From positions 186,001 to 250,000 of IMG/VR virus record IMGVR_UViG_3300020084_000003: 64,000 bases of DNA, one strand, 5' to 3'. Positions 40,926 to 63,334 of this stretch are shown here, piece by piece. Numbering within the stretch: the first letter of the stretch is position 1; each line of letters starts with the position of its first letter. The translations under genes and the position numbers were made by a program. Below the pieces are notes generated by a model, which was not told the DNA's origin, made no database searches, and saw nothing but the letters and a program-made list of their open reading frames with translations.

Positions 40926-43900
40926 TTATACTGTTGTTCCTAGAGGATACATGCGGTCTGCCCTGAAATTTCTTATCCAAGCTGAATTCAATTCAACTCT
41001 TGAAGATGCTTTCAAACCAACTCTAGTTCCCATTGGAGCATTTGCCGGAAGTTGATATAGACCATGATCTGACATTGATGTGTTTTCTATTAAACCAAAG
41101 GTATTGGTTCCATTAACTCTCAGAACGTAAGGATCAGGGTTGACACTCACAAGCTTTATTGTTCTGCCATCTAGATGTATGTCAATTCTGTTTGTTGTAT
41201 TTTGGAACATTCCAAGAGTAGTCCAAACACCATTAACTACCATCATTATAAAACTTCCTGTTGGGTTAGGGTGATCCCTTCTTCCCCATACCATGTAGTT
41301 GTTTTCATCAACAATTCTGAATGCAAGACCACCAGCATCACCCCAACCACTTAGATTACAAGAAATAATCATATCAGGAGAACCAAGATCAACTCTAGAA
41401 TAAAGCGCCCTTTGTGATGTTCCCACGGCTGAACGAGTGGTGTTTGATGTTACTTGAATAGACCCTGCTGTTCCACTTCCAACAATTGACCAGTTTGGAT
41501 TGCTTTCTAGTGGACCGTCAGCCATTTCAAAATTATCATAAACGCTTGAAACCACGTTTGTTGTAGAACGAACAATAACTTGATGCTCTCTGGTTACGGT
41601 ATTACCCCAACAATCAGTTGCTCTAATGTTAACTGTATATGTTCCAACAGGTCTTGTTCCATTATTTGCGAAACGCAATATTCTTCCCATTGAAGCAAGT
41701 TGGAACATGTCTGAGTTTGCACCCGGAACAATTTCAATGCTAACATTTGGCTCATTAATCAAAATATCATGAGACAAAGTGCGTCCAGCATTTGCGTTAA
41801 CCACGGTATGAGACAAAAATTCTAGTTGTTTTACAACTGGTTTCAAAGGCGGCGCATTACCATCAATTAATTCAGGTTCATCAGCCCATCTTGCCAATGG
41901 TGGAGGGCCACCACGATCATAGAATTGCAAGAATTCCAATGCACTACTGCCTGTAGGAGTAGTAATTGTAAAATCAATCCATGTGACTGCACGGGCATGT
42001 GTAACTCGGTCAGCATTGAACATATGAACGCGAGTTCTCCAAACACCGTTATCCAACCAGCAACCATTACGTCTAATGATATCATCACCGTGAACTTTGA
42101 ACAATGTTCTTTTTGGCGTTCTAGAGTTATAACCATTAGGGAATGTTTCTGGTGAATGGAAGCTTGGGAATAGATAAGGTCCAGCGCAGTCAATCCAAAC
42201 ACCACTAATTGATATTCCACCACGACTTCCTAATGTAATATTTGTGCTAACATCAGAATCCAGAACAAATACCGGCGCGGCTCCAACTGCAATAGCACTA
42301 TGGCCTGCTGGATAACCTGTGCCTAGTGGTTGTCTGTTAGGATCGGTTGGTTGAATTAATAGTGGATAATTCAGTGGCAATGCAGAAAGAGGTTGCGAAT
42401 CATATGAACGCAAAATCCATGAATCGGCATTGGTTGGGTGTCTTGTCCACGGTCCCATAATTCCAAATATACCTAATTCTCTGGCTCTTGTTTCTGTTAT
42501 AGTTCTATATGAAGTGCTTTCTCTTGCAGTGACATTTTCAAAAGTGCATTGAACAGTAACGCCTTTCCAGTTAAGTCCCATACCAGAATCTACAAATGCT
42601 CTATAATAGTTTTTCATATGCAAGAAGCTGAATGAGAAACCTTGAGACACAGTTCCCATTGTGACAACACGTGAAGTGTGCATCATATTCAATGGACCGA
42701 CATATAGAGATTTTGTAAACATATATTCACTGGAATACTGAGGAACCTCTATCGGATAAGGAACATCAATCATGTGGCATTTTTCAAATAATCCCGGTGT
42801 GGCATCATATTTTCTAACATCGCCGCCACGGTGAATAACAGAAATGCCGTGTGTGCAGGCATGACCTTCTACACCAAATACAGGCGGAATTTGAGGGCTT
42901 GTAACGGTAATATCTTCTTCAACCCAGACAGATTTGTATTCAGAGTTATCTCTGCTCCACCAAGATTGAATATCAGAAGAAATAAATCCGTCTGCCATTC
43001 TGATATCTTGCCAGCGAATCTGCCGAGTATTTCTTATCGGTTTTTGAGAATGCCATAGTGCAACATACTGACAACCAACACCGACACAATTTTTAAGTAA
43101 AATCATTCTTGATTGCAATTCGAATCCTACACCAGCATGTCCATTATGTCCAGTATAAAATTCTGCTCTGTCACCCCAAGATACACCTTCACCATTTCCT
43201 ATGCCGCCCATTGCCACACAGTTAATTGCTTGACCAATTTCATTGCCCAATTCCCAAACAAATCCTGCGCCTCTAAAATGAGAAACAAAACAATCTTCCA
43301 TTGCGCTTCTGGTTCCGTGAGCAACCAAAGCCCAACCCGGAATCGGAGGCGCACTTAATGGTGCATAAACACGAACGCCAACCACATCAACCATTCGTGA
43401 TGATTTATATGGACCACCTGACCAGTGTAAGTGGAAAGCCCATTTTCCTGTTACGTTTAATGGATCGGTAAGCTCTGTTCCACCTTGAACATCATATAGT
43501 GGATTTACTGTAACTACACCACCAGCTAATTCTACTCTATATGGAAATACTGTGTGTGGTGTATTTAATGTTGGATTAGTATCAGAACGACCAAAGTTTT
43601 TAAAAGCTGCATAACGAATTGAAACGTCATCGGTTCCCATTGGCATGAAATGCGGTCTTTTTTGCAAGTTAGTCAAATCTGCGGTCGGATCAATGGCACC
43701 GTCTTCTTCTTGTGAAGCCGCTCTAAATAAAATTGATGCATAATTGTTGCTGACGCAAGGCGCTACGGTTACGACTTCTGAGTTAGGTAATGTTGAAGTT
43801 TCCCCAAAATGGTTTCTTGACAATGGTCGGTTTATTCTAACCATATCATTTGCCATGACTTCGGTTACAGTCACTTCTTCATTGTAATTAAGTTGGAATT

Positions 43901-44834
43901 TATTTAGAACTACAGAACCAATTCTTGCCAAAGAACTCCAATAACGAGATGGGCCGGTATATGTTGGATCATTTGCAGCTAGTGGTCTATATTCACGTGA
44001 ACCTATTGTCAAGACATGGCCGACTGCCCCACCACCAGCAGCAAAGCCGGGTATGTGTATTACAGTAGCATTTTGTGGTGCGCCGGGAAGTGTTTGTGGA
44101 GATATAACACCAAGACGATAATTGGCACGAATTTTTGCACCAACAATACGGGTTGGACCCATCGGCATCATTCCCAATTTACCTGTATCTAAAGGTAATT
44201 CAACCGGATGAACAATAAATTCATGTTTTGGTCTTCCGGCAACTTCGCTTAAACCTTCATCCCATATATTTGTAATACCCATCCACATATATGTGCAAAA
44301 ACGAATTCTTGTGTGAGTATTTGGATCGACGGTTAAAGTTGCGTCAACTGGACCACCAATCCAGTTCAATATTACATCTGATTGTTCATCTAATATTAAT
44401 CTCATGTTGCTTCCACCCCAAACCGAATCACCAGTTTGTGGTTTTGTTCCAACATCCCATATTGAAGGGTCTGACCATCTACCAGATTTAATCTGCCTGT
44501 GAGTTATTTGTCCCATTGCAGGCATTGGGTGAGTTTTGGTATTGATAAACTCCGCTCTTCTATTTTTATAATATTCTTTAGGAGTAAATGTAGTTTTACC
44601 ATTTCCTGTAATTCTAATTTCAGGAATTCTACCTGTTACCGTAACACTTGGTTTTGTTCTAACCGCTGTCCACGGTCCTGTGGCAGAAGTCTTTGACCAT
44701 TCTACTAGAGTATTTGGCGGAAGATTGGCAATTGTTCCCCATTTTCCATTTCGTTTTACTTCTAGCTCAATCTCAGTGACTGTGCCAGCAGGATTGCCGT
44801 TTTGTGCGGCAATTCGCCACCATATCTTAGCCAT
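40926..44834 (-). CDS. Large virion appendage protein: G8 domain, beta-helix (depolymerase-like), cadherin/Ig and lectin-like C-terminus
   Basis: SGRWSDPSIW...P..GDSV (G8), G+W.FHLH, ELGNEIG, GHAGVGF beta-helix motifs; YTVNIRATD. Confidence 0.65.
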   Translation of the reverse strand: MAKIWWRIAAQNGNPAGTVTEIELEVKRNGKWGTIANLPPNTLVEWSKTSATGPWTAVRTKPSVTVTGRIPEIRITGNGKTTFTPKEYYKNRRAEFINTKTHPMPAMGQITHRQIKSGRWSDPSIWDVGTKPQTGDSVWGGSNMRLILDEQSDVILNWIGGPVDATLTVDPNTHTRIRFCTYMWMGITNIWDEGLSEVAGRPKHEFIVHPVELPLDTGKLGMMPMGPTRIVGAKIRANYRLGVISPQTLPGAPQNATVIHIPGFAAGGGAVGHVLTIGSREYRPLAANDPTYTGPSRYWSSLARIGSVVLNKFQLNYNEEVTVTEVMANDMVRINRPLSRNHFGETSTLPNSEVVTVAPCVSNNYASILFRAASQEEDGAIDPTADLTNLQKRPHFMPMGTDDVSIRYAAFKNFGRSDTNPTLNTPHTVFPYRVELAGGVVTVNPLYDVQGGTELTDPLNVTGKWAFHLHWSGGPYKSSRMVDVVGVRVYAPLSAPPIPGWALVAHGTRSAMEDCFVSHFRGAGFVWELGNEIGQAINCVAMGGIGNGEGVSWGDRAEFYTGHNGHAGVGFELQSRMILLKNCVGVGCQYVALWHSQKPIRNTRQIRWQDIRMADGFISSDIQSWWSRDNSEYKSVWVEEDITVTSPQIPPVFGVEGHACTHGISVIHRGGDVRKYDATPGLFEKCHMIDVPYPIEVPQYSSEYMFTKSLYVGPLNMMHTSRVVTMGTVSQGFSFSFLHMKNYYRAFVDSGMGLNWKGVTVQCTFENVTARESTSYRTITETRARELGIFGIMGPWTRHPTNADSWILRSYDSQPLSALPLNYPLLIQPTDPNRQPLGTGYPAGHSAIAVGAAPVFVLDSDVSTNITLGSRGGISISGVWIDCAGPYLFPSFHSPETFPNGYNSRTPKRTLFKVHGDDIIRRNGCWLDNGVWRTRVHMFNADRVTHARAVTWIDFTITTPTGSSALEFLQFYDRGGPPPLARWADEPELIDGNAPPLKPVVKQLEFLSHTVVNANAGRTLSHDILINEPNVSIEIVPGANSDMFQLASMGRILRFANNGTRPVGTYTVNIRATDCWGNTVTREHQVIVRSTTNVVSSVYDNFEMADGPLESNPNWSIVGSGTAGSIQVTSNTTRSAVGTSQRALYSRVDLGSPDMIISCNLSGWGDAGGLAFRIVDENNYMVWGRRDHPNPTGSFIMMVVNGVWTTLGMFQNTTNRIDIHLDGRTIKLVSVNPDPYVLRVNGTNTFGLIENTSMSDHGLYQLPANAPMGTRVGLKASSRVELNSAWIRNFRADRMYPLGTTV

Positions 44835-44864
44835 CTATATACTCCTTTGTTTTTATTTCTTTTA

Positions 44865-44872
44865 TATTTATA
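44865..44872 (-). promoter_or_regulatory. T4-type late promoter
   Basis: TATAAATA. Confidence 0.7.
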
Positions 44873-44893
44873 TAATGATGGCGAGTAATTTTA

Positions 44894-46447
44894 TTACCAA
44901 ACTCTAATGTTATCAAACTCATTGTAGTTGCCTGTTTGATCGGCACCGGCCATTATTACCAAATAATGGGTTGTCTGTGTGGCAACAAAAGTATTTGTTA
45001 TTGTTCCTATTGTCATAACATCATTCACACGGAATCTCTCTCCCGAATATGAAGTTCCGCCAGTGTTAAACACCCCAATCATGGCACCAAATCTGTTTAA
45101 TGCTGTTTGATCCACGCTGACGTTATAAGTTCTACCAACTGTCAACCCGGAAAGAGTTCTAACAACATAAGGATAAACTCTGTTTGCTGATGAAGTCAAT
45201 CTCATGCGTCCTAACACAAGGCTAAGTCTCGCTGCGTCTACGCTAACTGCCCATCCGTTATTGGTATCTGGTGAATATGCTGTATATCCGTTGGTGTTTG
45301 AGTCAAAGGTATCATTTATAACATAAACAATAGGCGCTGTTGTGACGCGGAATGTTGATGCTACACCACCTATTGTCAAAACACCATTGGTTTCTGTATT
45401 TGCTGTAGATGAAGACATTACTCTCATACGAACCAAATCATAAGGCAAAACTGAACCAGCAGTGTTTACAAATGTTCCTCCATTTATAGAATAACTACCA
45501 CCGGTCACACTAATAGGTGTTGGTCCATTTATTCCAGTAATTTCAACGTTACTTGAACTTGTATCTGTTGATAATGATGCACCAGTTATATTTGTAAATG
45601 TAAACGCATTAGGAACAGTATCAACTACAAGGTTTACACCAGAAGCTACGCGAACTGCACTTGCCAAAAGATTGAAACCGCGTCTTGTTAAATGCAAACC
45701 ATCTGTAAAATAAACTGTGTTTAATGGATCAGAAAACTCACTTATAGCTTCAAAATCTACTACAGTATATTCTAGATTTGATGCGTTTGATCTTATCCAG
45801 TTATTGAAACCAACTCTCAAAGTTTCACGTGCAGTAGTGAAGTTGGCAACTCTAAGTAGAGTTCCAACCAAGACTTTATATCCTGCGGCTTTTGCTTTGT
45901 TTATATATGAAGTCATCGAGTTTCTAAGTGCAGTTTCAGTAATACCAGAAGTATTCATGATATCGTTAATTCCGCCAAGGATCACTAATGTATTTCTTCC
46001 ACTTGAGCTATATTGTGTAGGAACGTTTCTAGACGCAAATGTGCTGTCCATTTCTGCTAATGTTCTTCCACTCACGCCCAGATTTGTCATAGGTAATCCG
46101 GTGATAGTAGCAAGCTGCGAAGGATAAGACGGAGTAACGCCATATCCTTCTGTTATGCTATCGCCGTCCAACACATAACCAAGAGTAGCAACTAATCCTA
46201 TTCTTAAACTTCTAGTTATTGTTGCCGGTGTTGCTGATCCGTTTTGTGCGACCCATACTGCACTGTAAAGACCCTCTGGCGCATTATTATAATTTCCGCC
46301 TACAACAGTCCCAGAAACGCTATCTGTTATTGGGGATGAAATTGATGTAAGATTGACAGGTGATCCATTAAAGGATAAGGTCAAAGTTAGACTAGGGTCT
46401 GGAATCCCTGCTATCTTTGTTGGCGGTGTTATTATAAGATTTGCCAT
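44894..46447 (-). CDS. SGNH/GDSL esterase-containing appendage protein with beta-sandwich domains
   Basis: GDSIT, GVSG, GGIND, DGLH catalytic blocks. Confidence 0.8.
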   Translation of the reverse strand: MANLIITPPTKIAGIPDPSLTLTLSFNGSPVNLTSISSPITDSVSGTVVGGNYNNAPEGLYSAVWVAQNGSATPATITRSLRIGLVATLGYVLDGDSITEGYGVTPSYPSQLATITGLPMTNLGVSGRTLAEMDSTFASRNVPTQYSSSGRNTLVILGGINDIMNTSGITETALRNSMTSYINKAKAAGYKVLVGTLLRVANFTTARETLRVGFNNWIRSNASNLEYTVVDFEAISEFSDPLNTVYFTDGLHLTRRGFNLLASAVRVASGVNLVVDTVPNAFTFTNITGASLSTDTSSSNVEITGINGPTPISVTGGSYSINGGTFVNTAGSVLPYDLVRMRVMSSSTANTETNGVLTIGGVASTFRVTTAPIVYVINDTFDSNTNGYTAYSPDTNNGWAVSVDAARLSLVLGRMRLTSSANRVYPYVVRTLSGLTVGRTYNVSVDQTALNRFGAMIGVFNTGGTSYSGERFRVNDVMTIGTITNTFVATQTTHYLVIMAGADQTGNYNEFDNIRVW

Positions 46448-46468
46448 AGATCAATCCTCCAAAATCTA

Positions 46469-49039
46469 TTAACTTATAGTTGGGTCTGTAGAATGTATAA
46501 CAATTTCGGATTCGTTGGCAGTTACACTATATTCATCCAAATCATTATTGGTTTCTTCTATTTGTAAACTACCACCAGAAAGTTCCGGGTCTGTAATAGC
46601 TGTATTTATGGTAGCACTTGCTGTCTGAGAAACATTTGTTGCAACAATATTAGATGCTCTTTCAGTCCATACCATCTGTCCATGTGTTACAGGAACATAT
46701 GTGAAAGGATCACCGTTATCTCTAGTCACTACAACTTCGCCAGCAACAGATAATGTTCTGGTATATGTTATTGGTGTAGCACCTGTGAATGTTCCCGGTG
46801 TTATAGTAAATGTTTCTCCAACTGTCGCTGTAGATGGAGTTATTTGTGGTTGTGTCGCAGGGGTCGGCGGCTGTATGGCTTCACCGTCAGGATTCATTCC
46901 AAAAACAGGTATGTTCCACTTAACCGCAATATCTCTCATCGCCTTTGTTATATTGGCTGGTGATTTTGCTGTATTTTGAACCAACAGTTCATAAAAATCT
47001 AAATTGCCTTGCTCACCAAGTTGAGGCTCACTGCCTGTTTGTATACCTCTATCAGAAAATAGGCTAAACATTACGTTTGATCCTATAACATCTGTTTGTT
47101 GTGTAACAAGGTTTGCAACAGGCTCAGAAACATTTGTATCCCATACAGTAACTCGCATACCATCATATCTGACTGCAACAATTCTAGGGACGTTTACTGA
47201 GTTTGCATGGTTCCAGTTAACGTCATTTCCAAAAGTTCTATCAATTGATCTTCTCATGGTCGATTGTGTTGAACCATTTACCAAACCGGTTGTGTGAATG
47301 CCAGAGTTAATCTGACCACTAAGCGCCCAAACATAACTTGATCTTGTATCAGTTGGCTTATACGCCATGATGATAGTGTATGGTCTGTTTAATCCTCTAA
47401 TAATATCTAAAAGGGAAGCTGTAGAATTTTCAAATCTGCTTCTGTCATTAGTGTTTATTCCCGTTGAAGTTATCCTCAATGCTTGCAAACCATTTTGGGC
47501 ATTTGTAACCAATGTTCTTCCTGATTCGGCCCCTGCCCCTGTGAAGTTTCCGCCACTAGATGCTCTTTTGTTTATAATAGTTGCAACCGCCTCTGGTGTG
47601 GTGACGCTCATGGTAATTCTTGTTTGGTCGGACATATCCAGCCAAACAGAAGAATCATTCCATGTTGAATAGTCTGAAACCTCTTCATGAGCAACGTTTA
47701 CTGTTGTAGTTATAACTAAAGGTTGCCCCACGCCATTATCTACAGTAACTATAAAATCTAGTGGACCCGCAACTGTGCTTCTAAATGTTCTATTTCCATA
47801 GTTGAATCTATCGGTAACATCAACACCATTTTGAACAATTCTTCTGCTAACTTTAATGGGCGCTGTTCCACCGAATTCTCCACTATTAAAAGTAAATGTA
47901 GTTCCAACTGCACCAGATGATGGCGTTATAGACGGTTGTGTGGTCACGGTAGGTGCGGTAGGAGTAGAAGGCGCTGCAATGGTGTTATTTGAACCAATTA
48001 TCATTGGAGGCATGTTTCTAAACGGATGGTCAATTGGCAATGCTTCTCTTCCGCCGTAAAGCCAAGCTGCATATCCAGAAAGCAATGTTTTTTCTTCTAG
48101 AGTCAATAATCTAGTAAATACTAACACTTGGCATCCATGACCACCCCAAGATGAAATGCTTCCAGCTTTACCCCACATGGATAGACCAAAATCTCTAAAA
48201 ATGTTGGTTCTCCATTCTATCAATTTTGTTGGAAATAGAATGCCGGGAGAATGATCCCTGTCACTATTACCAGCATAATCAAATGCGCTACCTTGGCCTT
48301 GCGTATTCCATCCGAATTCATTTGAATACATCGCCAACTGTCTCCAATCGTTGGAAGTATTTGAGACAGAAGCCAAAATATTTGTAGCTGACGGCAAGCT
48401 GTTGTCTTGCGCTCTTGCTATTATAAATGCAGTTGCAGCATTTGGAATGTTAGGAGCCATTAATCTACGTCTACTAACACTGTCAACTGGTGAATAAATT
48501 GTTCTTTGTCCTTCCAATGTTCCAACTCTAGGAATATCATTTGAGGCTGTTGGAACTGTAGCAACTATATTATTCCACCTATCTGTGACGCCTGTTGTTA
48601 AAGTTGGATCATTTGCGTCCAAAACAGCATGGCGCATATCGAACCATGCTGCACGTGCAGTTGGATCAATTGCGTTTGGTGTCCACATTTGAATTGAATT
48701 ACTATCGCCACATTTAATTTCTGCACCTTCATGCTGCATGGTTAATACAAAAGTATTTCCTGTAGCATTAGGTATAGCAACACCGTTTGCAGTCCATTGT
48801 CCCGCAATTGTTGAAGAGTAAGTAGAGCCTGCATAACCACTACCAGAGGATATTGAAATGACCGGTGCTTCAACATTTTCTATATCTAATGTTGTTCTTT
48901 CAATATATTCACCGACAGTTCTAATTTGCAAGTTAACGCCAGAAGGATAACTACTTACAGAAAAGTTTGTTGTGCCGGGATAATAAGTCCATTCACCATC
49001 TGGTCCAACTCGGACTAGCACACCTGATATATTAGGCAT
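46469..49039 (-). CDS. Appendage protein with Ig-like and two LamG/ConA-like domains
   Basis: AWFD / VWLD.SD domain starts, GY.AW.YG...LP.DHPF, repeated P.ITPS...VG.TFT...G.F.G..PI Ig-like units. Confidence 0.55.
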   Translation of the reverse strand: MPNISGVLVRVGPDGEWTYYPGTTNFSVSSYPSGVNLQIRTVGEYIERTTLDIENVEAPVISISSGSGYAGSTYSSTIAGQWTANGVAIPNATGNTFVLTMQHEGAEIKCGDSNSIQMWTPNAIDPTARAAWFDMRHAVLDANDPTLTTGVTDRWNNIVATVPTASNDIPRVGTLEGQRTIYSPVDSVSRRRLMAPNIPNAATAFIIARAQDNSLPSATNILASVSNTSNDWRQLAMYSNEFGWNTQGQGSAFDYAGNSDRDHSPGILFPTKLIEWRTNIFRDFGLSMWGKAGSISSWGGHGCQVLVFTRLLTLEEKTLLSGYAAWLYGGREALPIDHPFRNMPPMIIGSNNTIAAPSTPTAPTVTTQPSITPSSGAVGTTFTFNSGEFGGTAPIKVSRRIVQNGVDVTDRFNYGNRTFRSTVAGPLDFIVTVDNGVGQPLVITTTVNVAHEEVSDYSTWNDSSVWLDMSDQTRITMSVTTPEAVATIINKRASSGGNFTGAGAESGRTLVTNAQNGLQALRITSTGINTNDRSRFENSTASLLDIIRGLNRPYTIIMAYKPTDTRSSYVWALSGQINSGIHTTGLVNGSTQSTMRRSIDRTFGNDVNWNHANSVNVPRIVAVRYDGMRVTVWDTNVSEPVANLVTQQTDVIGSNVMFSLFSDRGIQTGSEPQLGEQGNLDFYELLVQNTAKSPANITKAMRDIAVKWNIPVFGMNPDGEAIQPPTPATQPQITPSTATVGETFTITPGTFTGATPITYTRTLSVAGEVVVTRDNGDPFTYVPVTHGQMVWTERASNIVATNVSQTASATINTAITDPELSGGSLQIEETNNDLDEYSVTANESEIVIHSTDPTIS

Positions 49040-49060
49040 TATATGCTCCTTTATTATTCA

Positions 49061-50599: not shown

Positions 50600-50612
50600 A
50601 ATAAACTCCTAA

Positions 50613-56600: not shown

Positions 56601-57275
56601 TGGGCCTGCTGGACCTTGGATACCTTGTGGTCCAGTATTTCCAGTTAAACCAATTGGGCCTTGTGGTCCTTGTGGGCCAACCGGTCCCTCTGGACCTTGT
56701 TCGCCTCTAATGCCCTGTGGGCCTGTGTTTCCAGTTAAACCAATTGGCCCTTGTGGACCCATTGGACCCTCTATACCATCTGCCCCTGCTGGACCTTGGA
56801 TACCTTGTGGACCTGTGTTTCCAGTTAAACCTATTGGGCCTTGTGGTCCTATTGGACCGGCTGGACCTGACGGGCCTGCGATACTTCCACCACTTACATA
56901 TTCCTGACCATCATAGAACCACAAATTAGTTCCTACAATGTAAGTGTCGCCTATTTCTGGTTCTGGATCAAGAGGAAGCTCTGATACACTTTCAAATAAA
57001 CCAAGTATTGTAGAATTGCTTCTAGTTTTTCTTCTTGAAAATTCATCAAAATTTACTTCTGCTTCTACGCCTTCCTCATATGTTCTTAAACGAACATCCA
57101 TGTTCGCAGGAATAACGGTAACGAATCCAGAACGAATTCTAGAATTAGTCTTAACCGATGAGCCACTAGGAGAAAATTCTACTAATACAACATCCCCGGA
57201 GGATACATTGAATATAGTAGAACCTGTGGTTTTAATTACTTGTGACCACTGATTGTTTACCGTTATTAACGCCAT
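50613..57275 (-). CDS. 2220-aa modular appendage protein: anchor, collagen, Ig, clan GH-A-like hydrolase, two SGNH domains, LamG/lectin domains
   Basis: GxY repeats; [26 protein letters not shown]; GHSLT...DDIH; GASLM...GGND...DNVH. Confidence 0.75.
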
Positions 57276-57295
57276 ATCTTGCCTCTTAAATCAAA

Positions 57296-58420
57296 TTATA
57301 CTTGTGGTCTTCTTAGACCCGCAGCCAACAATGGAAATGCCCCTGAATTTCTAAAAAATTCAGATGGGTATGTTGAAGGCCATGTTCTTTCTGTCCCTGC
57401 CGCACCTGTAATTGCACCAGCTTGTGTCATAAGAACTCCCGGTGGACTTCCAGTATTTAGAGGTTGACCCAAATCAACACCAATTTCTGCTGATGCCATA
57501 TGAGATACGCCTGTGGTTTGCCATTGGAAACCACCTGATGGTATATTCAAAGAAAATCCTAGCCATACTTTATCACTGTGTTGATTGTGCAAAATAGGAG
57601 TTGCCAAATCTACTGCGCCAGAGTTTGTGTTAACAACTGGTGTTTGAACTTTAACCAAAAGTTGTCCCGGCAATCCATTTGAGTTACTATCATAAATTCC
57701 CATTTCTATTATGGCACCGGCTGTGATTGATCCTTGAATGCCCATGAATAAGCTGACAATATCATATCCTTCACAATACAAAGGTCTTACTTTAACTCTA
57801 TCTCCATGCCCTTCTGTAGTTGCTGAACCGTTACTCCATGCAGACCAATGGGATTGATGCCTATCAATGCTTGGATATGGTCTTACATATGGTTTGATTT
57901 TGTAAGTATCAAACATTTTGTTGCTACTTGTTGGCTGAGAAACTGAAATGTCTCCTGAACCCAAGATTGATTGACCATTTATTGTTTTAAATTCAGTCTC
58001 GCCGGGTCTACCTTGAATACCTCTGATATTTCCGCCGTTTACATATTCTGTGCCATTATAGAACCAAAGATCACTTCCTACTATGTATGTATCTCCCAAC
58101 TGTGGAGTTGGGGTTGTAGGCAAATCATCTGTAGAAACAAAAGAGCCTAGAATTGCAGTGCTGTGTCTGTTCTTTTCTCTAGTGAACTCATCCATAAATA
58201 CATCGACTGTATAGCTTGGAGTAGTAGTTCTAAGTTGAAAATACATATTGCCCGGCAAAATGGTAGAAAAACCTGCCAGAATTCTTGATTCGTTTGAAAA
58301 TTCATCTGCAACAGTAGAAAATCTTATCGAAATATGCTCACCAGAAGGAACATTAATTAATGTTGAACCTGTGGTTTTAATAACAGGTGTCCAACTATTA
58401 CTTACATTTAACAATGGCAT
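57296..58420 (-). CDS. Short fibre protein with the shared N-terminal anchor domain
   Basis: N-terminus paralogous to 50613-57275 and 59265-63296; KTINGQSILGSGDI fibre motif; GIYDS....PG.LL. Confidence 0.65.
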   Translation of the reverse strand: MPLLNVSNSWTPVIKTTGSTLINVPSGEHISIRFSTVADEFSNESRILAGFSTILPGNMYFQLRTTTPSYTVDVFMDEFTREKNRHSTAILGSFVSTDDLPTTPTPQLGDTYIVGSDLWFYNGTEYVNGGNIRGIQGRPGETEFKTINGQSILGSGDISVSQPTSSNKMFDTYKIKPYVRPYPSIDRHQSHWSAWSNGSATTEGHGDRVKVRPLYCEGYDIVSLFMGIQGSITAGAIIEMGIYDSNSNGLPGQLLVKVQTPVVNTNSGAVDLATPILHNQHSDKVWLGFSLNIPSGGFQWQTTGVSHMASAEIGVDLGQPLNTGSPPGVLMTQAGAITGAAGTERTWPSTYPSEFFRNSGAFPLLAAGLRRPQV

Positions 58421-58456
58421 CTATTCTGACCTCTTACACTTTGATTGTTATAACGT

Positions 58457-58464
58457 TATTTATA
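58457..58464 (-). promoter_or_regulatory. T4-type late promoter
   Basis: TATAAATA. Confidence 0.7.
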
Positions 58465-59251
58465 TGTCGTTAAGCCAGTTATTCACAACTATATTCTCTC
58501 CTTCGATATAAGATATAGCAGGTTTAAATGCTGCTCTGTAAACATCGAAGCTTCCGCCAGTTGCAGTAGTTCTTCCCATTGTAAACGCAGAGGTAGCAAT
58601 GTTCGCGCCTCTTGTTAGATTGAAGTTGACCCTTTGACCATCAACTTCACAAAAACAGTCTACTGTAACATCTTGACCACCAGAAGGGGTGTTGATTATA
58701 AGATTTCTAATAAATCCATCGTTAACCGAAACCGCTGGCGTAAAGCTTCCACTGCTACCTTGTTGAACTTCAAATGAAATAGAACCACTCGCGTTTTGAA
58801 CATAACCAAATCTTCTATTTCCACCAATTCCGTTGTGTCTCCCCCAAATTTGACCACCAGTTCCAGCAGCATGTCTTATTTTCATAGCTTTTACTATGCT
58901 AGAATATGCTGTAAATGATGCCACACATCTTAAAAATACGTTTGTCTCCATAAACGAAACATATCTTTTTCCGTTATTATCTACTCTTAAAGTCGGGACG
59001 GGGTGTGCAGGATCGCGAACCAAATCCCAAGCATTAGAACCTTGAGATTTCCAGCAATGAACAGGGCCATTAATTACAGCAGGAATAGTGCCTGCGTCAT
59101 CCGAGAAAACATCAACATTTGCGTCATACCATATGTAATCAGCAGGCAGACGTTTAGGCATGGGCCATACAAAGCCCATGCCTTTCATTTGTAAAACTTG
59201 ATTGTTACCATATTTTATTTGAACGGCATTAACTAAATCTAACTTTGGCAT
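58460..59251 (-). CDS. Putative fibre-tip / receptor-binding protein (LamG-like)
   Basis: N-terminal IKYGN.QV......FVWP adaptor-like motif; IWYDA...V..W.SQG. Confidence 0.5.
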   Translation of the reverse strand: MPKLDLVNAVQIKYGNNQVLQMKGMGFVWPMPKRLPADYIWYDANVDVFSDDAGTIPAVINGPVHCWKSQGSNAWDLVRDPAHPVPTLRVDNNGKRYVSFMETNVFLRCVASFTAYSSIVKAMKIRHAAGTGGQIWGRHNGIGGNRRFGYVQNASGSISFEVQQGSSGSFTPAVSVNDGFIRNLIINTPSGGQDVTVDCFCEVDGQRVNFNLTRGANIATSAFTMGRTTATGGSFDVYRAAFKPAISYIEGENIVVNNWLNDI

Positions 59252-59264
59252 AATAAATCCTAAT

Positions 59265-62200
59265 TTAAGCTATTCTTACTACTAATTCGAATGGACCCGG
59301 ATTAGAAGCATCAAATGCGGCTTGAGTATTAACTGTGGTTATTATTATAGATTGCCCCGCTGGACCGGTGTTTCCAACTGGACCTTGCGGGCCAGTGTTA
59401 CCTACCGGACCTTGAATACCTTGTGGTCCAGTATTTCCTTGCGGCCCTTGTGGACCTTGGATGCCCTGTGGGCCGGTGTTGCCAACTCGACCTTGAGGGC
59501 CTATCGGACCACGTTCGCCTACTGGTGAAAACGCAAGAATATCCCAATTAGTTGAAATATTTTCAAATGGTGAAGAATTTCCATCTGTTTGTGAAATCCA
59601 AACAAAAGATGCAACTGATCCGTTAAGAGGATCGCCATCACCATCTAGTATTTGGTAAACACCATCTCCTTCTGTATAAACAGAATTTGGATTCCACAAT
59701 CCTCTCCAATTTAAACCGGTTCCTACATCACCTTTTGGACCAACTGGACCTTGTGAGCCTTGCGGACCTATCGGGCCTTGTGGACCCTCTGGGCCTGTTG
59801 GGCCTACTGGACCAATATCACCTTGTGGACCTTGTTCGCCCACTGGTGAAAATACAAGAATGTCCCAATCAATACCCATGTTTTCAAAAGGATTGCTATT
59901 GCCGGGTTCTTCTGGTAGCCAGATATAAGATATAACTGAACCATTCAACGGTGAACCAGAACTTATATTTATTGTTTGATATACAACATCGTTTTTATTA
60001 TATATCTCACTAGATAGCCATTCACCCTTCCATTCAATTCCAACTTCACCTTGTGGGCCTACTGGACCTTGCGGGCCAATCGGGCCTTGTGGTCCCGCAA
60101 CACCTTGCGGTCCAGTATTTCCTTGTGGACCCTGAACACCTTGTGGTCCTGTTGGACCTGTCGGGCCAACATCACCAACATCACCTTTTTCGCCTCTTTG
60201 GCCTTGGACACCTTGGATACCTTGTGGGCCTTGTGGTCCAGCAGGGCCAACCGGACCTGTATCGCCAATGTCACCCTTTTCGCCTCTTGGGCCTTGTGGT
60301 CCAGTTTCTCCAACTAAACCTTGTGGTCCGGTTTCACCTTGTGGTCCAGTAAGTCCAATTGGACCTTGAGGGCCGGTTTCGCCTTGTGGACCTTGGATAC
60401 CTTGTGGACCTGTGTTACCGACCGGACCTTGAGGGCCAACCGGACCCTCTGGACCTTGGACGCCTTGTGGACCTGTGTTACCTGTCGGACCTACTGGACC
60501 TTGAATACCTTGTGGTCCAGTATTTCCAGTTAAACCTATTGGACCTTGGATACCTTGTGGACCTGTGTTACCAACTGGACCTTGAATACCCTGAATACCT
60601 TGTGGTCCGGTATTTCCGACCGGGCCTTGTGGACCTTGGATACCTTGTGGACCAGTGTTGCCAACCGGACCTTGCGGGCCAGCTATACCTTGTGGACCAG
60701 TGTTACCGACCGGACCTTGAGGACCAGTTGGGCCTTGTGGCCCCTGTGGACCTTGGATACCTTGGATACCATTTTCTCCCTGAATACCTTGCGGCCCTTG
60801 TGGGCCAACTGGACCTTGCGGACCTACTGGACCCGCTGGACCTTGTTCACCCACTGGTGAAAATACAAGAATATCCCAATTTACGGAAATATTTTCAGAT
60901 GGTATGGAGTTTCCAGATGTATTTGCAGTCCAAACAAAAGATGCAACAGAACCATTTAGAGCATTATTGCTTGAGCTTAATATTTGATAAACAGCGTCAT
61001 CTTTTTCATATACAGAATTAGAACTCCACAATCCTCTCCAATTTATACCTTTAGGACCAACTGGACCAATAGGGCCAACTAAACCACGCGGGCCAACTGG
61101 ACCTTGCGGACCTTGAATGTTTCCAACGTTATTCCATGAATCATCATTAATTGAGTAAACCCACAAGTTTCCGTCAATTATGTATGAATCTCCATTTTCA
61201 GATGTTAATGGCAGATCATCTTCTGATTCGAGCGCACCAATAATATTTACGCCGGTTCCATCGTCACCTTTTTCGCCAATATCACCTTTTGGACCAACCG
61301 GACCTTGCGGACCTACTGGACCTTGAATACCTTGTGGACCTGTGTTACCTGTCGGGCCAACTGGACCTTGAATGCCTTGTGGTCCGGTGTTGCCTTGTGG
61401 CCCTTGTGGTCCTATCGGGCCACGCTCACCTGTTGGACCTTGCGGCCCTTCCGGTCCCTGAATACCTTGTGGGCCAGTATTTCCAACCGGTCCTTGAGGG
61501 CCAGTTTCACCTTGTGGTCCGGTGTTGCCTTGTGGCCCTTGTGGACCGGTATTACCAACTGGACCTTGCGGACCTTGAATACCCTGAATACCTTGTGGAC
61601 CGGTGTTACCGGTTGGACCTGTAGCGCCTCTATTTGCCAAAATAGACCATGTAGAGGTAGTAGTTGGAACAACGTTAATTGCAGTATTTACTATTAAGAT
61701 ATAAGAAGTATTTGAAGAGTAAACAACATCATTTCTTGAATATGTTGCAGCAGCGTTATAGTTTCCTCTCCAAGTTATACCAACTGGACCGGTATTACCA
61801 ACTGGACCTTGCGGACCTGTGTCACCGACCGGGCCTTGTGGTCCGGTTTCACCCTGAATACCTTGCGGTCCAGTATTTCCAGTTAAACCTTGAATACCCT
61901 GCGGGCCTTGAATACCTTGTGGGCCTGTGTTACCAATATCGCCTTTTGGACCAACCGGACCTTGCGGACCTACTGGACCTTGAATACCTTGCGGTCCAGT
62001 ATTTCCAGTTAAACCTTGTGGGCCTTGTGGTCCGGTTTCGCCTCTCTCGCCTCTTTGACCTTGCGGACCTGTTGGACCTACCGGGCCTTGTGGACCTTGG
62101 ATACCTTGTGGACCTTCATCACCCACATCACCTTTTGGTCCAACTGGACCAATTGGACCTTGAATACCTTGTGGGCCAGTATTTCCAGTTAAACCTTGGA

Positions 62201-63296
62201 TACCTTGTGGGCCTTGTGGACCGGTATTGCCAACTGGACCCTGCGGACCAACTGGACCTTGTTCGCCTTGCGAACCTCTGTTTGCAAGAATTGACCATGT
62301 AGATGTAGTTGTTGGATTTATATTGACAGCATTGTTTGATATTAAAATATATGATGTATTTGAATAATAAACAACATCATTTCTAACATATGTAGCTGAC
62401 GTGTTATAGCTTCCCCTCCAAGTTATACCTTGTGGGCCTACTATACCTTGAATACCTTGTGGCCCTTGTGGACCGGTATTACCAACTGGACCTTGCGGAC
62501 CTGTGGCACCCTGCGGTCCAACTGGACCTTGCGGACCTATTGGACCAACTGGACCTTGAATGCCTTGTGGACCGGTGTTTCCAGTTAAACCTATTGGGCC
62601 TTGTGGTCCTATTGGACCTACCGGGCCACGCTCACCTGTTGGTCCTAATGGGCCTTGTGGTCCTATTGGACCCTCTGGGCCTATTGGACCTTGCGGACCA
62701 ACATCACCAGTATCACCTTTAATTTTACCAATATTTTCCCAATTGCCTGAACCTTGGCTAAACCACAAATCTCCATTAATAATATAACAGTCGCCTCTAG
62801 GAGCGTTTACTGGCAATAATGTTGGATTGTCTACAGTTCCTCTAATGTTAACACCGGTTCCTCTTGGACCTTGCGGACCTGCTGGACCACGATCACCTTT
62901 CAGAGAACCACCATCAACAAATTCCAAACCATTATAATACCATAGATGCTCATCTATGATATACGCATCGCCTATCTCGGCAACTTCTGGCAAATTTATT
63001 ACGCTTCCAAGATTACCTTTTATTAAGGTTCCTCTTGAAGTAATGTCGTTATTAAATTCTTTTATGAATATACGTGCGGTTTTATTTGCTGTTGCTACGG
63101 CTCTAAAGCGGACTGTAGTATTAGCTGGTATTGTTCCAATAAAACCCGGTCTAAGCAAAGCACCATTATTGTATGTTTCTGGTGCTTCAACCCCAAAACT
63201 CATTAAAACCGGTGCGCCTGTCTTTATGCTGACAAGCGACAAACCGGTTGTTACTATTGGTTCTGACCATGTGTTTCTAACTACCAAATCTGTCAT
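59265..63296 (-). CDS. Collagen-like fibre protein with interspersed small beta modules
   Basis: Several hundred residues of GPQ/GPV/GIQ/GNT triplets; five WxG.Y/W modules; three LP..GD.YII.G.LW modules. Confidence 0.9.
59350..62890. repeat. 9-bp-periodic collagen-coding repeats
   Basis: Recurring ggaccttg / ccttgtgg / ccagtatttccagttaaacc units; locally GC-rich. Confidence 0.85.
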
Positions 63297-63326: not shown

Positions 63327-63334
63327 TATTTATA
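63327..63334 (-). promoter_or_regulatory. T4-type late promoter heading the appendage cluster
   Basis: TATAAATA about 30 nt upstream of ATG 63296. Confidence 0.75.

What the first reader, a model, noticed from the sequence alone, without database searches (positions are those of the whole stretch)
40926..63296. 22-kb late cluster encoding a modular, cellulosome-like glycan-degrading appendage array
Seen: eight consecutive late genes carrying at least six predicted catalytic domains with intact motifs: a G8/beta-helix, three SGNH esterases, GH16 (EIDIME) and a clan GH-A-like hydrolase (NEVWN, YEGG). They also carry Ig, LamG and lectin-like domains and collagen stalks, and none resembles T4 gp34-38. 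Inference: a multi-enzyme virion assembly in which esterases de-acylate and hydrolases cut EPS, capsule or biofilm glycans (for example acylated alphaproteobacterial EPS or beta-glucans), held out on flexible collagen fibres.
Basis: partly seen in the sequence, partly recalled or inferred. Interest (0 to 1): 0.72.

Follow-up and report, generated by a model that had tools for sequence, protein, structure and literature searches.

The report
Enzyme-loaded tail-fibre gene cluster of lake phage
An uncultivated 285-kb T4-like phage from lake water carries a 22-kb late-gene block, sitting where T4 keeps its tail-fibre genes, that encodes collagen-stalked fibres and side proteins with six sugar-cutting or de-acylating domains; it is most likely a branched host-recognition apparatus of a known general kind in an unusually enzyme-rich form.

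Summary
Eight back-to-back minus-strand ORFs fill 40926-63296, and T4-type late promoters (TATAAATA) lie 31-38 nt upstream of g1, g3 and g8.

All six catalytic-domain calls found independent support:
- **GH16 (g5):** family profile against solved laminarinases gives E 2.5e-13, and E353/D355/E358 are invariant.
- **Clan GH-A barrel (g4 385-930):** Z 19.3 to GH51, with the NE motif after strand 4 and a Glu in strand 7.
- **SGNH (g7):** passes the Pfam cut-off.
- **SGNH (g4 1548-1760):** tblastn E 2e-21 to an annotated phage esterase.
- **Divergent SGNH-fold domain (g4 947-1266):** Z 15.3 to DUF4886.
- **G8 (g8):** Pfam G8 passes in a 35%-identical homologue at the matching position, and language-model features score 0.96.

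New findings:
- g1, g3 and g4 share one N-terminal anchor domain.
- g5 and g6 share a second, roughly 52-residue N-terminal module.
- g2 may cap the g1 collagen fibre (weak support).
- Homologues of g4, g5 and g8 lie in tail modules of other phages and of Paracoccaceae prophages. One of them fuses GH-A, SGNH-like, GH16, SGNH and LamG domains in a single chain.
- Two sister phages have a minimal locus without the enzyme payload.

"Cellulosome-like" is not supported. The closest known kind is the branched multi-depolymerase receptor-binding complex of phages such as CBA120 and RaK2. Virion attachment and enzyme activity are inferred, not shown.

The parts
63327..63334 (-). T4-type late promoter TATAAATA, 31 nt upstream of the g1 start
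59265..63296 (-). g1: 1343-aa collagen-like fibre. Class-I N-terminal anchor (residues 1-133, nt 62898-63296). 268 GXY triplets in 8 runs, which would give roughly 230 nm if fully triple-helical. Short globular inserts, one weakly CBM5/12-like. A 27-aa non-collagen C-terminal tail. No catalytic domain.
58460..59251 (-). g2: 263-aa protein with no detectable homologues. Candidate tip or cap protein of the g1 fibre: its residues 1-29 are predicted to contact g1 residues 1316-1343 of all three chains.
   Evidence: ipSAE 0.53 against best control 0.00; the tool's verdict was 'weak support'
58457..58464 (-). T4-type late promoter TATAAATA, 37 nt upstream of the g3 start
57296..58420 (-). g3: 374-aa short fibre. 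Class-I anchor (residues 1-140, nt 58001-58420; 49% identical to the g4 anchor), about 3 GXY triplets, and an unassigned C-terminal domain of about 200 aa.
50613..57275 (-). g4: 2220-aa giant fibre. In order: class-I anchor, collagen stalk, Ig, GH-A-like barrel, SGNH-fold module B, Ig, SGNH esterase, and about 460 aa not assigned.
56535..56876 (-). g4 collagen stalk: residues 134-247, 38 GXY triplets, roughly 33 nm
54486..56123 (-). g4 module A (residues 385-930): a beta-sandwich followed by a (beta/alpha)8 barrel of clan GH-A type. Candidate acid/base N645-E646 sits after strand 4 and candidate nucleophile E818 sits in strand 7. No Pfam family matches.
   Evidence: Foldseek E 1e-6 to GH51/GH10/GH39/GH53; VIA Z 19.3 to GH51, 15.9 to GH79 heparanase
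53478..54437 (-). g4 module B (residues 947-1266): divergent SGNH-fold domain resembling DUF4886. HSGHSL (S963) and DDIH (DxxH) are invariant across 10 homologues.
   Evidence: Pfam GDSL_2 and DUF4886 only at E 0.17-0.18; 4i8i_A Z 15.3, 221 of 259 residues aligned
51996..52634 (-). g4 C-terminal SGNH esterase (residues 1548-1760): block I is GAS (S1557), block III is GGND, block V is DNVH
   Evidence: Pfam 26.5-31.6 bits, below the 32.9 cut-off; tblastn 2e-21 to a Vibrio phage SGNH protein; Cellulophaga phage tail fibres 1e-14
50693..50700 (-). TATAAATA inside the 3' end of g4, 94 nt upstream of the g5 start; a possible internal late promoter
49061..50599 (-). g5: 512-aa GH16 protein. Class-II N-terminal module (residues 1-52). 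GH16 jelly-roll at about residues 217-490 (nt 49130-49951). Catalytic EIDIME at residues 353-358 (nt 49526-49543).
46469..49039 (-). g6: 856-aa non-catalytic binding protein. Class-II N-terminal module (1-52), a beta-sandwich module (58-347), Ig repeats, a LamG-like jelly-roll (455-711, nt 46907-47677), and a C-terminal beta domain.
44894..46447 (-). g7: 517-aa esterase. N-terminal Ig-like domain (1-99; also found at the N-terminus of the siphophage fibre P0006). SGNH domain (87-267, nt 45647-46189) with GDS S97, GxND N161 and DGLH. IPT/TIG-like Ig domain (about 274-384). C-terminal beta domain.
   Evidence: (69.2 bits, above the 32.9 cut-off)
44865..44872 (-). T4-type late promoter TATAAATA, 31 nt upstream of the g8 start
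40926..44834 (-). g8: 1302-aa tailspike-like protein. N-terminal adaptor (1-115; absent from two homologues). G8 domain (about 116-210, nt 44205-44489). Putative CEMIP-type beta-helix core (to about residue 800). Cadherin-like and jelly-roll-like C-terminal domains are read from the sequence pattern only.

Best explanation
The block is the late-expressed host-recognition and adsorption locus of an uncultivated freshwater T4-like jumbo phage. It occupies the place next to rnh/gp59/gp32 where T4 has genes 34-38.

Proposed organisation:
- Primary fibres: three fibres share one N-terminal anchor domain and therefore probably plug into the same kind of site on the virion. They are g1, a very long collagen fibre probably capped by g2; g3, a short fibre; and g4, a collagen-stalked giant carrying a clan GH-A-type glycosidase and two SGNH-fold esterases.
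- Secondary proteins: g5 (a GH16 beta-glucanase-like enzyme) and g6 (a LamG/Ig adhesin) share a second N-terminal module of about 52 residues, which probably docks them onto the assembly.
- Further depolymerase-type proteins: g7 (an SGNH esterase with Ig and beta domains) and g8 (a G8/beta-helix tailspike-like protein).

Proposed mechanism (inferred):
1. The long fibres and the lectin-like domains capture an acylated surface polysaccharide (EPS, capsule or LPS) of an alphaproteobacterial-type host.
2. The esterases strip acyl groups.
3. The glycanases (GH16, GH-A, beta-helix) cut the backbone.
4. This lets the baseplate reach the cell surface.

What is shown: gene layout, late-promoter motifs, domain folds and families, conserved catalytic residues, shared N-terminal modules, and tail-module context of homologues.

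What is inferred: virion attachment, enzyme activity, substrate and host.
For: Layout and promoters.

Genome type: a T4-like backbone (gp5/6/7/8, gp32, gp59, UvsX, gp41) with the nearest gp6 in Sinorhizobium phiM12/phiN3 at 35% identity.

Domain evidence:
- GH16: profile against PDB laminarinases 2.5e-13, with E353/D355/E358 invariant in 23 sequences. There are also tblastn hits to annotated beta-glucanases of Sinorhizobium and Rhizobium phages.
- GH-A: AF2 model with pLDDT 69.5, Foldseek E 1e-6, VIA Z 19.3. NE and E are conserved in the nearest homologues and in the genomic paralogue.
- SGNH.
- Module B: Z 15.3 to DUF4886, plus invariant Ser and DxxH.
- G8: Pfam passes in a 35%-identical homologue at the homologous segment, and Atlas features score 0.96 with 202 of 256 shared, against G8+CEMIP beta-helix clusters.

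Assembly evidence:
- Shared anchor in g1/g3/g4 at 33-49% identity.
- Shared module in g5/g6.
- g2 against the g1 tail: ipSAE 0.53 against controls 0.00, rated weak.

Tail context of homologues:
- The g4 homologues P0006 and P0008 lie downstream of GpJ-like tail genes. P0008 is followed by a g5 homologue and P0006 by a g8 homologue.
- A g8 homologue lies next to a phage-tail-repeat protein in an N4-like contig, and another lies next to a Phage_tail_C protein in a Falsirhodobacter prophage.
- PHROG tail-fibre hits.

Co-action evidence: P0006 fuses module A, module B, GH16, SGNH and LamG in one chain.

Positional evidence: two sister phages keep a collagen fibre and the GH16 gene at the same locus next to NUDIX-TK...rnh-gp59-gp32.
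Against: - No proteomic, imaging or transcript evidence exists. The genome is a metagenomic contig, and no RNA run was listed.
- Pfam does not recognise four of the six catalytic domains in this phage's own proteins.
- The g8 structure prediction failed (pLDDT 33), so its beta-helix rests on language-model features and on a G8 hit in a homologue.
- In more distant relatives of module A the NE pair is replaced by HK or TK, and in one of them the nucleophile Glu is replaced by Asp. The barrel may therefore be binding-only in some lineages.
- The class-I anchor has no detectable relative elsewhere, and its docking site on the virion is unknown.
- The baseplate module carries its own fibre-like protein with a C-terminus like the distal long tail fibre. 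This cluster need not be the only recognition apparatus, or the main one.
- The g1-g2 complex score is in the range the tool calls weak.
Confidence: 0.6

Rival explanations
1. Multi-host array rather than a synergistic one. Each enzyme-bearing protein recognises and degrades a different polysaccharide on a different host strain or serotype, as with CBA120 TSP1-4 or the many depolymerases of phiK64-1/RaK2. On this reading the cluster broadens host range instead of co-digesting one glycan.
For: There are several structurally unrelated catalytic folds, each paired with its own binding domains. g6-g8 and the g4 payload are absent from the sister phages, so they look like add-ons acquired independently. 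Homologues of g8, g5 and g4 occur separately in different phage types. Precedents are described in PMC8825819, PMC10253068 and PMC6872550.
Against: Three of the catalytic domains sit in one polypeptide (g4). A homologue fuses GH-A-like, SGNH-like, GH16, SGNH and LamG domains in one chain, which argues for joint action on one substrate. Esterases alone do not depolymerise a glycan.
Confidence: 0.3
2. Some members, especially g5, g7 and g8, are not virion parts. They are soluble late enzymes released at lysis that thin EPS or biofilm around the burst cell, helping progeny escape or preventing re-adsorption to debris.
For: g7 and g8 have no collagen and no class-I or class-II module. Late timing also fits lysis-associated enzymes. 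None of them has been seen in a virion.
Against: Homologues are encoded inside tail modules, not lysis cassettes. g8 has a swappable N-terminal adaptor of 115 aa that is absent from two homologues, which is typical of tailspikes. g5 shares its N-terminal module with g6 and with a small Ig protein of the sister phages, which suggests docking. g7's N-terminal domain recurs at the N-terminus of the fibre P0006.
Confidence: 0.15
3. The fibres decorate the capsid or neck ('hairy' phage) and mainly mediate reversible adhesion to particles, mucus-like matrices or cell surfaces. On this reading the catalytic-looking domains serve chiefly as carbohydrate-binding modules.
For: An Ig-like domain of g4 (residues 1250-1352) weakly matches a capsid decoration protein (8zvi, E 8e-4) and a 'virion structural protein' PHROG. 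Module A relatives have lost the NE pair. The anchor's attachment site is unknown. A separate fibre-like protein exists in the baseplate module.
Against: Catalytic residues are intact in all six domains, and they are kept in the paralogues parA and parB. The locus sits at the T4 tail-fibre position (the T4 map is from established knowledge). Homologues are tail-module genes.
Confidence: 0.12

Closest known systems
Branched multi-tailspike and multi-depolymerase receptor-binding complexes: Kuttervirus CBA120 TSP1-4; Klebsiella jumbo phages RaK2, phiK64-1 and phiKp24; KP32-type RBP1/RBP2 (PMC8825819, PMC10253068, PMC9700779, PMC6872550, PMC13352976)
   Same: Tandem late genes encode several glycan-degrading receptor-binding proteins. 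N-terminal anchor or docking modules are conserved while the C-terminal enzymatic parts vary. It occurs in a jumbo myovirus. Modules are exchanged between unrelated phages.
   Different: No sequence similarity to their anchor or branching domains was found. The stalks here are collagen triple-helix repeats. One chain (g4) carries three catalytic domains. The enzymes are GH16, a GH-A-like barrel, SGNH domains and a G8 domain, rather than mostly pectate-lyase-type beta-helices. Assembly has not been shown.
Esterase tailspikes, for example phage G7C gp63.1, an SGNH O-antigen deacetylase attached through gp66 (cited in PMC6872550)
   Same: An SGNH esterase is used as a receptor-modifying tail protein, and a second protein is docked through an N-terminal module.
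   Different: Here there are three SGNH-fold domains combined with glycosidases. The substrate is unknown.
GH16 'beta-glucanase' genes of Sinorhizobium and Rhizobium phages (phiM12, phiN3, phiM9, RHph_X2_24) and solved GH16 laminarinases (8xph, 3azx)
   Same: The same fold and the same ExDxxE catalytic motif.
   Different: Identity is only 26-29% over the catalytic core. g5 belongs to a separate family of about 500 aa with a long N-terminal extension and a docking module. Pfam PF00722 does not detect g5 itself.
G8 plus CEMIP-type beta-helix proteins (bacterial G8 proteins; the animal proteins CEMIP and TMEM2/CEMIP2, which sources name as hyaluronidases)
   Same: Language-model features score 0.96. 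Pfam G8 passes in a 35%-identical homologue at the position matching g8 126-210.
   Different: Pfam G8 and CEMIP_beta-hel do not hit g8 itself. No solved relative is detectable by sequence. The phage tail context is new: no paper in the searched library links the G8 domain to phage depolymerases.
T4 long tail fibre locus, genes 34-38
   Same: The genomic position next to rnh/gp59/gp32 is equivalent (the T4 gene order is from established knowledge). Late promoters are present.
   Different: No homology: gp37_C and Phage_fiber are absent. The architecture and the enzymatic content are entirely different.
Cellulosome
   Same: Several carbohydrate-active enzymes and binding modules are presumably held in one assembly.
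   Different: No cohesin, dockerin or scaffoldin was found. The assembly logic appears to be phage-type N-terminal anchors.

Membership tests
Glycoside hydrolase family 16 (g5) | Sequence or profile similarity to GH16 beta-jelly-roll catalytic domains | tested here: met
   A profile of 23 family members against the PDB matches 31 GH16 chains, the best at E 2.5e-13. The single sequence scores 1.2e-3. Distant family members carry PF00722. Pfam PF00722 on g5 itself gives no hit.
Glycoside hydrolase family 16 (g5) | Catalytic motif E-x-D-x-x-E on one beta-strand | tested here: met
   EIDIME is at residues 353-358 and aligns with the EIDIME of laminarinase 3azx. E353, D355 and E358 are invariant in 23 sequences.
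Glycoside hydrolase family 16 (g5) | Hydrolysis of beta-1,3 or beta-1,3-1,4 glycans | not testable with these tools
   Requires an enzyme assay.
Clan GH-A glycoside hydrolases (g4 385-930) | (beta/alpha)8 barrel fold | tested here: met
   In the AF2 model this part mostly has pLDDT 70-90. The top 50 Foldseek PDB hits are nearly all clan GH-A families (GH51, GH10, GH39, GH53, GH26), the best at E 1e-6. VIA gives Z 19.3.
Clan GH-A glycoside hydrolases (g4 385-930) | Acid/base Glu (usually in an N-E pair) after strand 4 and nucleophile Glu at strand 7 | tested here: met
   N645-E646 are model residues 271-272 and lie just after strand 265-269, the 4th of 8 strands. E818 is model residue 444 and lies in strand 439-448, the 7th. 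Both are conserved in P0006, P0007 and paralogue parA. In P0008-P0011, NE is replaced by HK or TK.
Clan GH-A glycoside hydrolases (g4 385-930) | Assignment to a named CAZy or Pfam family | tested here: not met
   There is no Pfam hit at E up to 10. The nearest Atlas shape clusters carry no glycoside-hydrolase Pfam family. dbCAN was not available.
SGNH hydrolase (g7) | Pfam Lipase_GDSL_2 above its gathering score, and blocks I, II, III and V | tested here: met
   The score is 69.2 bits against a 32.9 cut-off. The blocks are GDS (S97), a Gly block, GGIND (N161) and DGLH.
SGNH hydrolase (g4 1548-1760) | Pfam above its gathering score, and blocks I, III and V | tested here: inconclusive
   The score is 26.5-31.6 bits, below 32.9. 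However, tblastn gives 2e-21 to an annotated phage SGNH protein, and the motifs GAS (S1557), GGND and DNVH are present. Block I has Ala in place of Asp.
SGNH-fold / DUF4886-like (g4 947-1266) | Flavodoxin-like SGNH fold with a Ser nucleophile and a DxxH motif | tested here: inconclusive
   VIA gives Z 15.3 to the DUF4886 structure 4i8i, with 221 of 259 residues aligned. HSGHSL and DDIH are invariant in 10 homologues. The nucleophile region has pLDDT below 50, and Pfam GDSL_2 and DUF4886 hit only at E 0.17-0.18. That DUF4886 belongs to the SGNH clan is recalled from memory, not tested here.
G8 domain / CEMIP-type beta-helix (g8) | Match to Pfam G8 (PF10162) | tested here: inconclusive
   There is no hit in g8 itself. 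The homologous segment of a 35%-identical Paracoccus homologue passes at 29.9 bits against a 22.9 cut-off, and it maps to g8 126-210 at 40% identity.
G8 domain / CEMIP-type beta-helix (g8) | Right-handed beta-helix following the G8 domain | tested here: inconclusive
   The AF2 model failed, with pLDDT 33. Pfam CEMIP_beta-hel gives no hit. Atlas features score 0.96 with 202 of 256 shared against G8+CEMIP_beta-hel clusters.
Bacterial/phage collagen-like proteins (g1, g4) | Long uninterrupted Gly-X-Y repeats | tested here: met
   Pfam Collagen scores 363.7 and 60.1 bits. There are 268 and 38 triplets. In g1 the X position is Pro in 57% of triplets.
Cellulosome | Cohesin-dockerin pairs on a scaffoldin | tested here: not met
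   No Cohesin or Dockerin family appears in the Pfam scans of g2-g8 at E up to 10, or of g1 at E up to 0.01.
Branched phage receptor-binding complexes | Several receptor-binding proteins that share conserved N-terminal anchor or docking modules | tested here: met
   The class-I anchor is shared by g1, g3 and g4. The class-II module is shared by g5, g6 and the 189-aa protein of the sister phages.
Branched phage receptor-binding complexes | Physical assembly on the baseplate | not testable with these tools
   One pair only was modelled: the g1 tail with g2, at ipSAE 0.53 against 0.00, rated weak.
T4 gp34-38 long tail fibres | Homology to gp34-37 repeats or to the gp37 C-terminus | tested here: not met
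   PF12604 and PF03335 find nothing in the genome. No such PHROG match was found.

The most novel reading that the evidence does not exclude
This phage clade builds its adsorption apparatus on a plug-and-play system not described before. One anchor class feeds three different collagen-type fibres into the same virion site, and a second 52-residue module docks side proteins. This phage has used the system to accrete about 5,000 residues of enzymes, including an unclassified GH-A-like family, a DUF4886-like esterase and a G8/CEMIP-type beta-helix. That last domain would be the first G8-type phage depolymerase, and a tractable microbial model for the poorly understood catalytic mechanism of the animal CEMIP/TMEM2 proteins.
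Probability: 0.3. Interest if true: 0.75.

Novelty: new variant of a known kind. Interest (0 to 1): 0.55.

Why it matters
- **Scope of the known principle.** If the model is right, the branched, multi-depolymerase principle known from Klebsiella, Escherichia and Salmonella phages also operates in environmental T4-like jumbo phages. Here it uses different building blocks: collagen stalks and new anchor modules.
- **New enzyme candidates.** Three enzyme types have no characterised phage representative: an unclassified clan GH-A barrel family widespread in Pseudomonadota, a DUF4886-like esterase, and a G8-domain beta-helix. Their recurrent fusion with GH16 and SGNH domains points to a defined, probably acylated beta-glucan-type polysaccharide target. 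That would make them candidates for EPS- and biofilm-degrading enzymes.
- **A natural before-and-after pair.** The comparison with the minimal locus of the sister phages shows how receptor-binding loci can grow by module accretion.

Tried and rejected
**Searches and predictions that led nowhere**
- Megablast of the whole cluster against cultured phages found no match.
- tblastn of g8, g2, g3 and the upstream 832-aa ORF found no match.
- Pfam at E up to 10 found nothing for g2, g3, g5, g6 or g8.
- In the phage's own genome, Pfam G8, CEMIP_beta-hel, GH16 and Laminin_G_3 found nothing.
- The AF2 model of g8 built on 4 sequences was unusable, with pLDDT 33.
- A g8 family profile against the PDB found nothing. 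A module B profile against the PDB found nothing meaningful.
- PDB searches with g2 and g3 found nothing.
- Pfam scans of ten homologues of the g6 modules found nothing.
- A search for relatives of g6 in IMG/VR found none. Searches for relatives of the class-I anchor in IMG/VR and in JGI metagenomes found none, or only the contig itself.
- No RNA runs were listed for g5.
- Contigs from four other lake runs were identical at low depth, so they gave no information on microdiversity or module swapping.

**Ideas rejected**
- The cellulosome analogy, because there are no cohesin or dockerin domains.
- The idea that all the enzymes sit on collagen stalks, because only g4 does.
- The plus-strand ORFs inside g1 (for example 60359-61021), which are antisense artefacts of the GXY repeats.

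Full report
**Where the window comes from**

The window is positions 186001-250000 of a single 284,776-bp contig. The contig is an IMG/VR virus record that CheckV rates complete, and it is identical to a JGI metagenome contig. Its DNA occurs in at least eight lake-water metagenome runs. Four of these yield identical low-depth contig pieces over g5-g7.

The genome is T4-like:
- It encodes gp32, UvsX, a gp41-type helicase, primase and NrdA.
- It has a baseplate module with gp5, gp6, gp7-like and gp8 at about 56-103 kb.
- Its gp6 is most similar, at 35% identity, to Sinorhizobium phages phiM12 and phiN3. Methylophilales, Pelagibacter and Caulobacter T4-like phages follow.

**The observation**

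Eight minus-strand ORFs, g1 to g8, fill 40926-63296 with gaps of 13-59 nt.

The T4 late-promoter octamer TATAAATA occurs 11 times in the window, against 5.9 expected, and 10 of the 11 are on the coding strand. Four lie in the cluster: 31, 37 and 31 nt upstream of the start codons of g1, g3 and g8, and 94 nt upstream of g5. The likely transcription units are therefore g1-g2, g3-g7 (possibly with an internal promoter) and g8.

**Domain by domain**

*g1* is almost entirely collagen.
- Pfam Collagen scores 363.7 bits, and there are 268 GXY triplets.
- The X position is Pro in 57% of triplets, and the Y position is mostly Gln, Thr or Val.
- Short globular inserts interrupt the repeats. One of them gives a weak CBM_5_12 signal (E 0.027).
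- The protein ends in a 27-residue non-collagen tail.
- At 0.286 nm per residue (a textbook value), the repeats would span roughly 230 nm.

*g4* is built as follows:
- Residues 1-133 are an N-terminal domain.
- Residues 134-247 are collagen.
- An Ig-like domain follows (about 282-379, repeated at 1256-1362).
- Module A covers residues 385-930.
- Module B covers residues 947-1266.
- An SGNH domain covers residues 1548-1760.
- About 460 further residues are not assigned.

*g4 module A.* An AlphaFold2 model of residues 375-1270, built on 14 homologous segments, has mean pLDDT 69.5, and module A is mostly at 70-90.
- Foldseek against the PDB returns mostly clan GH-A enzymes: GH51, GH10, GH39, GH53 and GH26, the best at E 1e-6.
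- The Foldseek-independent search gives Z 19.3 for a GH51 arabinofuranosidase and Z about 16 for GH44 and GH79 heparanases.
- N645-E646 fall just after the fourth barrel strand, and E818 falls in the seventh, which is the clan GH-A arrangement.
- Both are conserved in the closest homologues and in a genomic paralogue.
- They are replaced in more distant relatives.

*g4 module B* aligns with the DUF4886 structure 4i8i at Z 15.3, with 221 of 259 residues aligned. It keeps an invariant HSGHSL serine and a DxxH motif in ten homologues. Pfam sees only faint GDSL and DUF4886 signals, and the nucleophile region is poorly modelled.

*The g4 C-terminal SGNH domain* falls just below the Pfam cut-off. 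It matches annotated SGNH and tail-fibre proteins of Vibrio and Cellulophaga phages at E 2e-21 to 1e-14. It has the motifs GAS, GGND and DNVH.

*g5* belongs to a family of at least 80 clusters of proteins about 500 aa long. Its distant members carry Pfam GH16.
- A 23-sequence profile hits 31 solved GH16 enzymes, the best at E 2.5e-13, and E353, D355 and E358 are invariant.
- Cultured-phage matches are the annotated beta-glucanases of Sinorhizobium and Rhizobium phages.

*g6* shows no sign of a catalytic domain. It is a chain of beta-sandwich modules with a LamG-like jelly-roll at residues 455-711. The Atlas structure match has TM 0.83 by the matched row, and 443 modular relatives were found.

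*g7* is a clear SGNH esterase at 69.2 bits, with all blocks intact, followed by an IPT/TIG-like domain.

*g8* has only a handful of homologues, and its AF2 model failed.
- Residues 105-800 give language-model scores of 0.96 against G8 plus CEMIP-beta-helix clusters.
- The Pfam G8 model passes its cut-off in a 35%-identical Paracoccus homologue, on the segment that aligns with g8 126-210.

*g2 and g3* have no detectable relatives beyond the shared N-terminus of g3.

**How the pieces may be put together**

- *Class-I anchor.* g1, g3 and g4 share a homologous N-terminal domain of about 130-140 residues. Identity is 49% between g3 and g4 and 33-39% to g1. Three fibres of very different length and payload therefore probably use the same attachment site.
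- *Class-II module.* g5 and g6 share a different N-terminal module of about 52 residues. It is also present in all close g5 homologues and in a 189-aa protein of two sister phages. That 189-aa protein matches g6 at E 1.8e-13 and g5 at E 1.6e-6, and several columns are invariant.
- *g8 adaptor.* g8 carries a 115-residue N-terminal segment that two of its homologues lack. This is the pattern of a swappable tailspike adaptor.
- *g7 N-terminus.* The N-terminal Ig-like domain of g7 recurs, duplicated, at the N-terminus of the siphophage fibre P0006.
- *g1 and g2.* A complex prediction of three copies of the g1 C-terminus with g2 gave ipSAE 0.53 against 0.00 for all three controls. The N-terminal 29 residues of g2 pack against the tails of all three g1 chains. 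The tool rates this range as weak support.

**Evidence from elsewhere**

- g4 homologues at 38-46% identity lie downstream of GpJ-type tail genes in siphovirus-like contigs. One, from a Tara sample, is followed by a g5 homologue at 44% identity. Another is followed by a full-length g8 homologue at 34% identity.
- That second protein, P0006, contains module A, module B, a Pfam-passing GH16 domain, an SGNH domain and a LamG domain in one chain. This natural fusion of the toolkit that is spread over g4-g6 here is the best available argument that the activities act together.
- Other g8 homologues sit next to a phage-tail-repeat protein in an N4-like contig, and in prophage regions of Falsirhodobacter and Paracoccus. 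g5 homologues also occur in Paracoccus. This hints at a host in or near the Paracoccaceae, but does not prove it.
- Two related T4-like contigs are syntenic from DnaB through UvsX, gp32, gp59, an RNaseH-like gene, TK and NUDIX up to a 60%-identical g5 homologue.
  - Their upstream collagen fibre stops after the Ig domains, without any enzyme module.
  - A 189-aa protein made of the docking module plus an Ig domain stands where this phage has g6-g8.
  - The enzyme payload is therefore an accretion on a simpler ancestral locus.
- In T4 itself, genes 34-38 follow 32-59-33-dsbA-rnh (established knowledge). The locus is therefore positionally equivalent to the tail-fibre genes without being homologous to them.
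- Split paralogues of modules A and B, with their motifs intact, lie at the two ends of the contig.

**Interpretation**

The best reading is a late-expressed, modular adsorption apparatus. It would consist of primary fibres sharing one anchor, secondary proteins sharing a docking module, and several depolymerase-type enzymes aimed at an acylated surface glycan.

The pairing of GH16 glycanases with esterases has a known rationale. In Sinorhizobium the GH16 enzymes ExoK and ExsH cleave succinoglycan, and acetyl and succinyl groups modulate that cleavage. This is established knowledge and was not tested here.

The cellulosome analogy fails its defining test, since there are no cohesin or dockerin domains. 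The right comparison is the branched multi-depolymerase complexes of CBA120, RaK2, phiK64-1 and phiKp24, and the KP32-type RBP1/RBP2 systems (PMC8825819, PMC10253068, PMC9700779, PMC6872550, PMC13352976).

What is new here:
- the collagen stalks;
- the two anchor classes, which have no detectable relatives among known branching domains;
- three catalytic domains in one chain;
- the enzyme types themselves. No paper in the searched library links G8 domains to phage depolymerases.

Nothing here shows that the proteins are in the virion or that they are active. Both rest on context and on conserved residues.

**Verdict**

- This is a new variant of a known kind, of moderate to good interest.

Noticed in passing
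outside the window: genome 293-2707 (-) and 282751-284703 (-), i.e. L003:293-2707 and L002:13751-15703: Split paralogues of the g4 enzymatic core lie at the two contig ends. An 804-aa protein is 52% identical to module A and keeps NEVWN and YEGG. A 650-aa protein is 34% identical to module B and keeps HSGHSL and DxxH, and its reading frame stays open to the contig end. If the genome is circularly permuted, these two genes are adjacent and in the same order as in g4.
   Followed up: partly
L017:2-3036 and L018:2-3017 (related T4-like contigs): Sister phages have a minimal version of the locus. Their collagen fibre ends after the Ig domains, followed by a GH16 protein 60% identical to g5, then a 189-aa protein made of the docking module plus an Ig domain, then NUDIX-TK. 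Both contigs break inside the collagen repeat.
   Followed up: partly
window 37144-37869 (+): An HNH-type homing endonuclease gene (PHROG 314, E 6.5e-24) is the only plus-strand gene in this stretch. It sits between the RNaseH-like gene and the VWA-like gene, and it is absent from the same position in the syntenic contigs L017 and L018.
   Followed up: partly
window 940-3003 (-) and 8002-9396 (-): The phage encodes a 687-aa protein matching PHROG 4871, labelled ATP-dependent protease (E 3e-171), and a nicotinamide phosphoribosyltransferase (E 9e-158). These are auxiliary functions unrelated to the finding.
   Followed up: no
outside the window: genome 71564-77134 and 77217-82841 (+), L004/L005: Two tandem paralogous proteins of about 1,860 aa (PHROG 358, function unknown, E about 1e-280) sit in the baseplate module. 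They are followed by a 1012-aa protein whose C-terminus matches long-tail-fibre distal-subunit PHROGs. The baseplate therefore has its own large appendages.
   Followed up: no
outside the window: genome 251014-253512 (-), L001:2014-4512: An 832-aa ORF lies 1.7 kb upstream of g1 and has no match in Pfam, PHROGs or cultured phages. It could be a further member of the structural cluster.
   Followed up: partly
L014:5964-12389 (uncultured Paracoccus sp. genome): Here the g8 homologue is the C-terminal part of a 2142-aa open frame that has about 680 extra N-terminal residues. This is the copy in which Pfam G8 passes its cut-off.
   Followed up: partly
window 60001-62000: GC content rises to 0.50, against about 0.40 in the flanks, and many long plus-strand ORFs appear (for example 60359-61021 and 61679-62302). 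Both are by-products of the GGN-CCN codon repeats of the g1 collagen gene, not signs of extra genes.
   Followed up: yes
g4 homologues P0008 and P0012 (L010 and unlocated): Other fibres built on modules A and B carry different payloads: an Sde182 nucleoside-hydrolase-like domain with fn3 and LamG in P0008, and a PhoD-like phosphatase with a phage-tail-repeat N-terminus in P0012. The scaffold therefore appears to accept varied enzymatic cargo.
   Followed up: no
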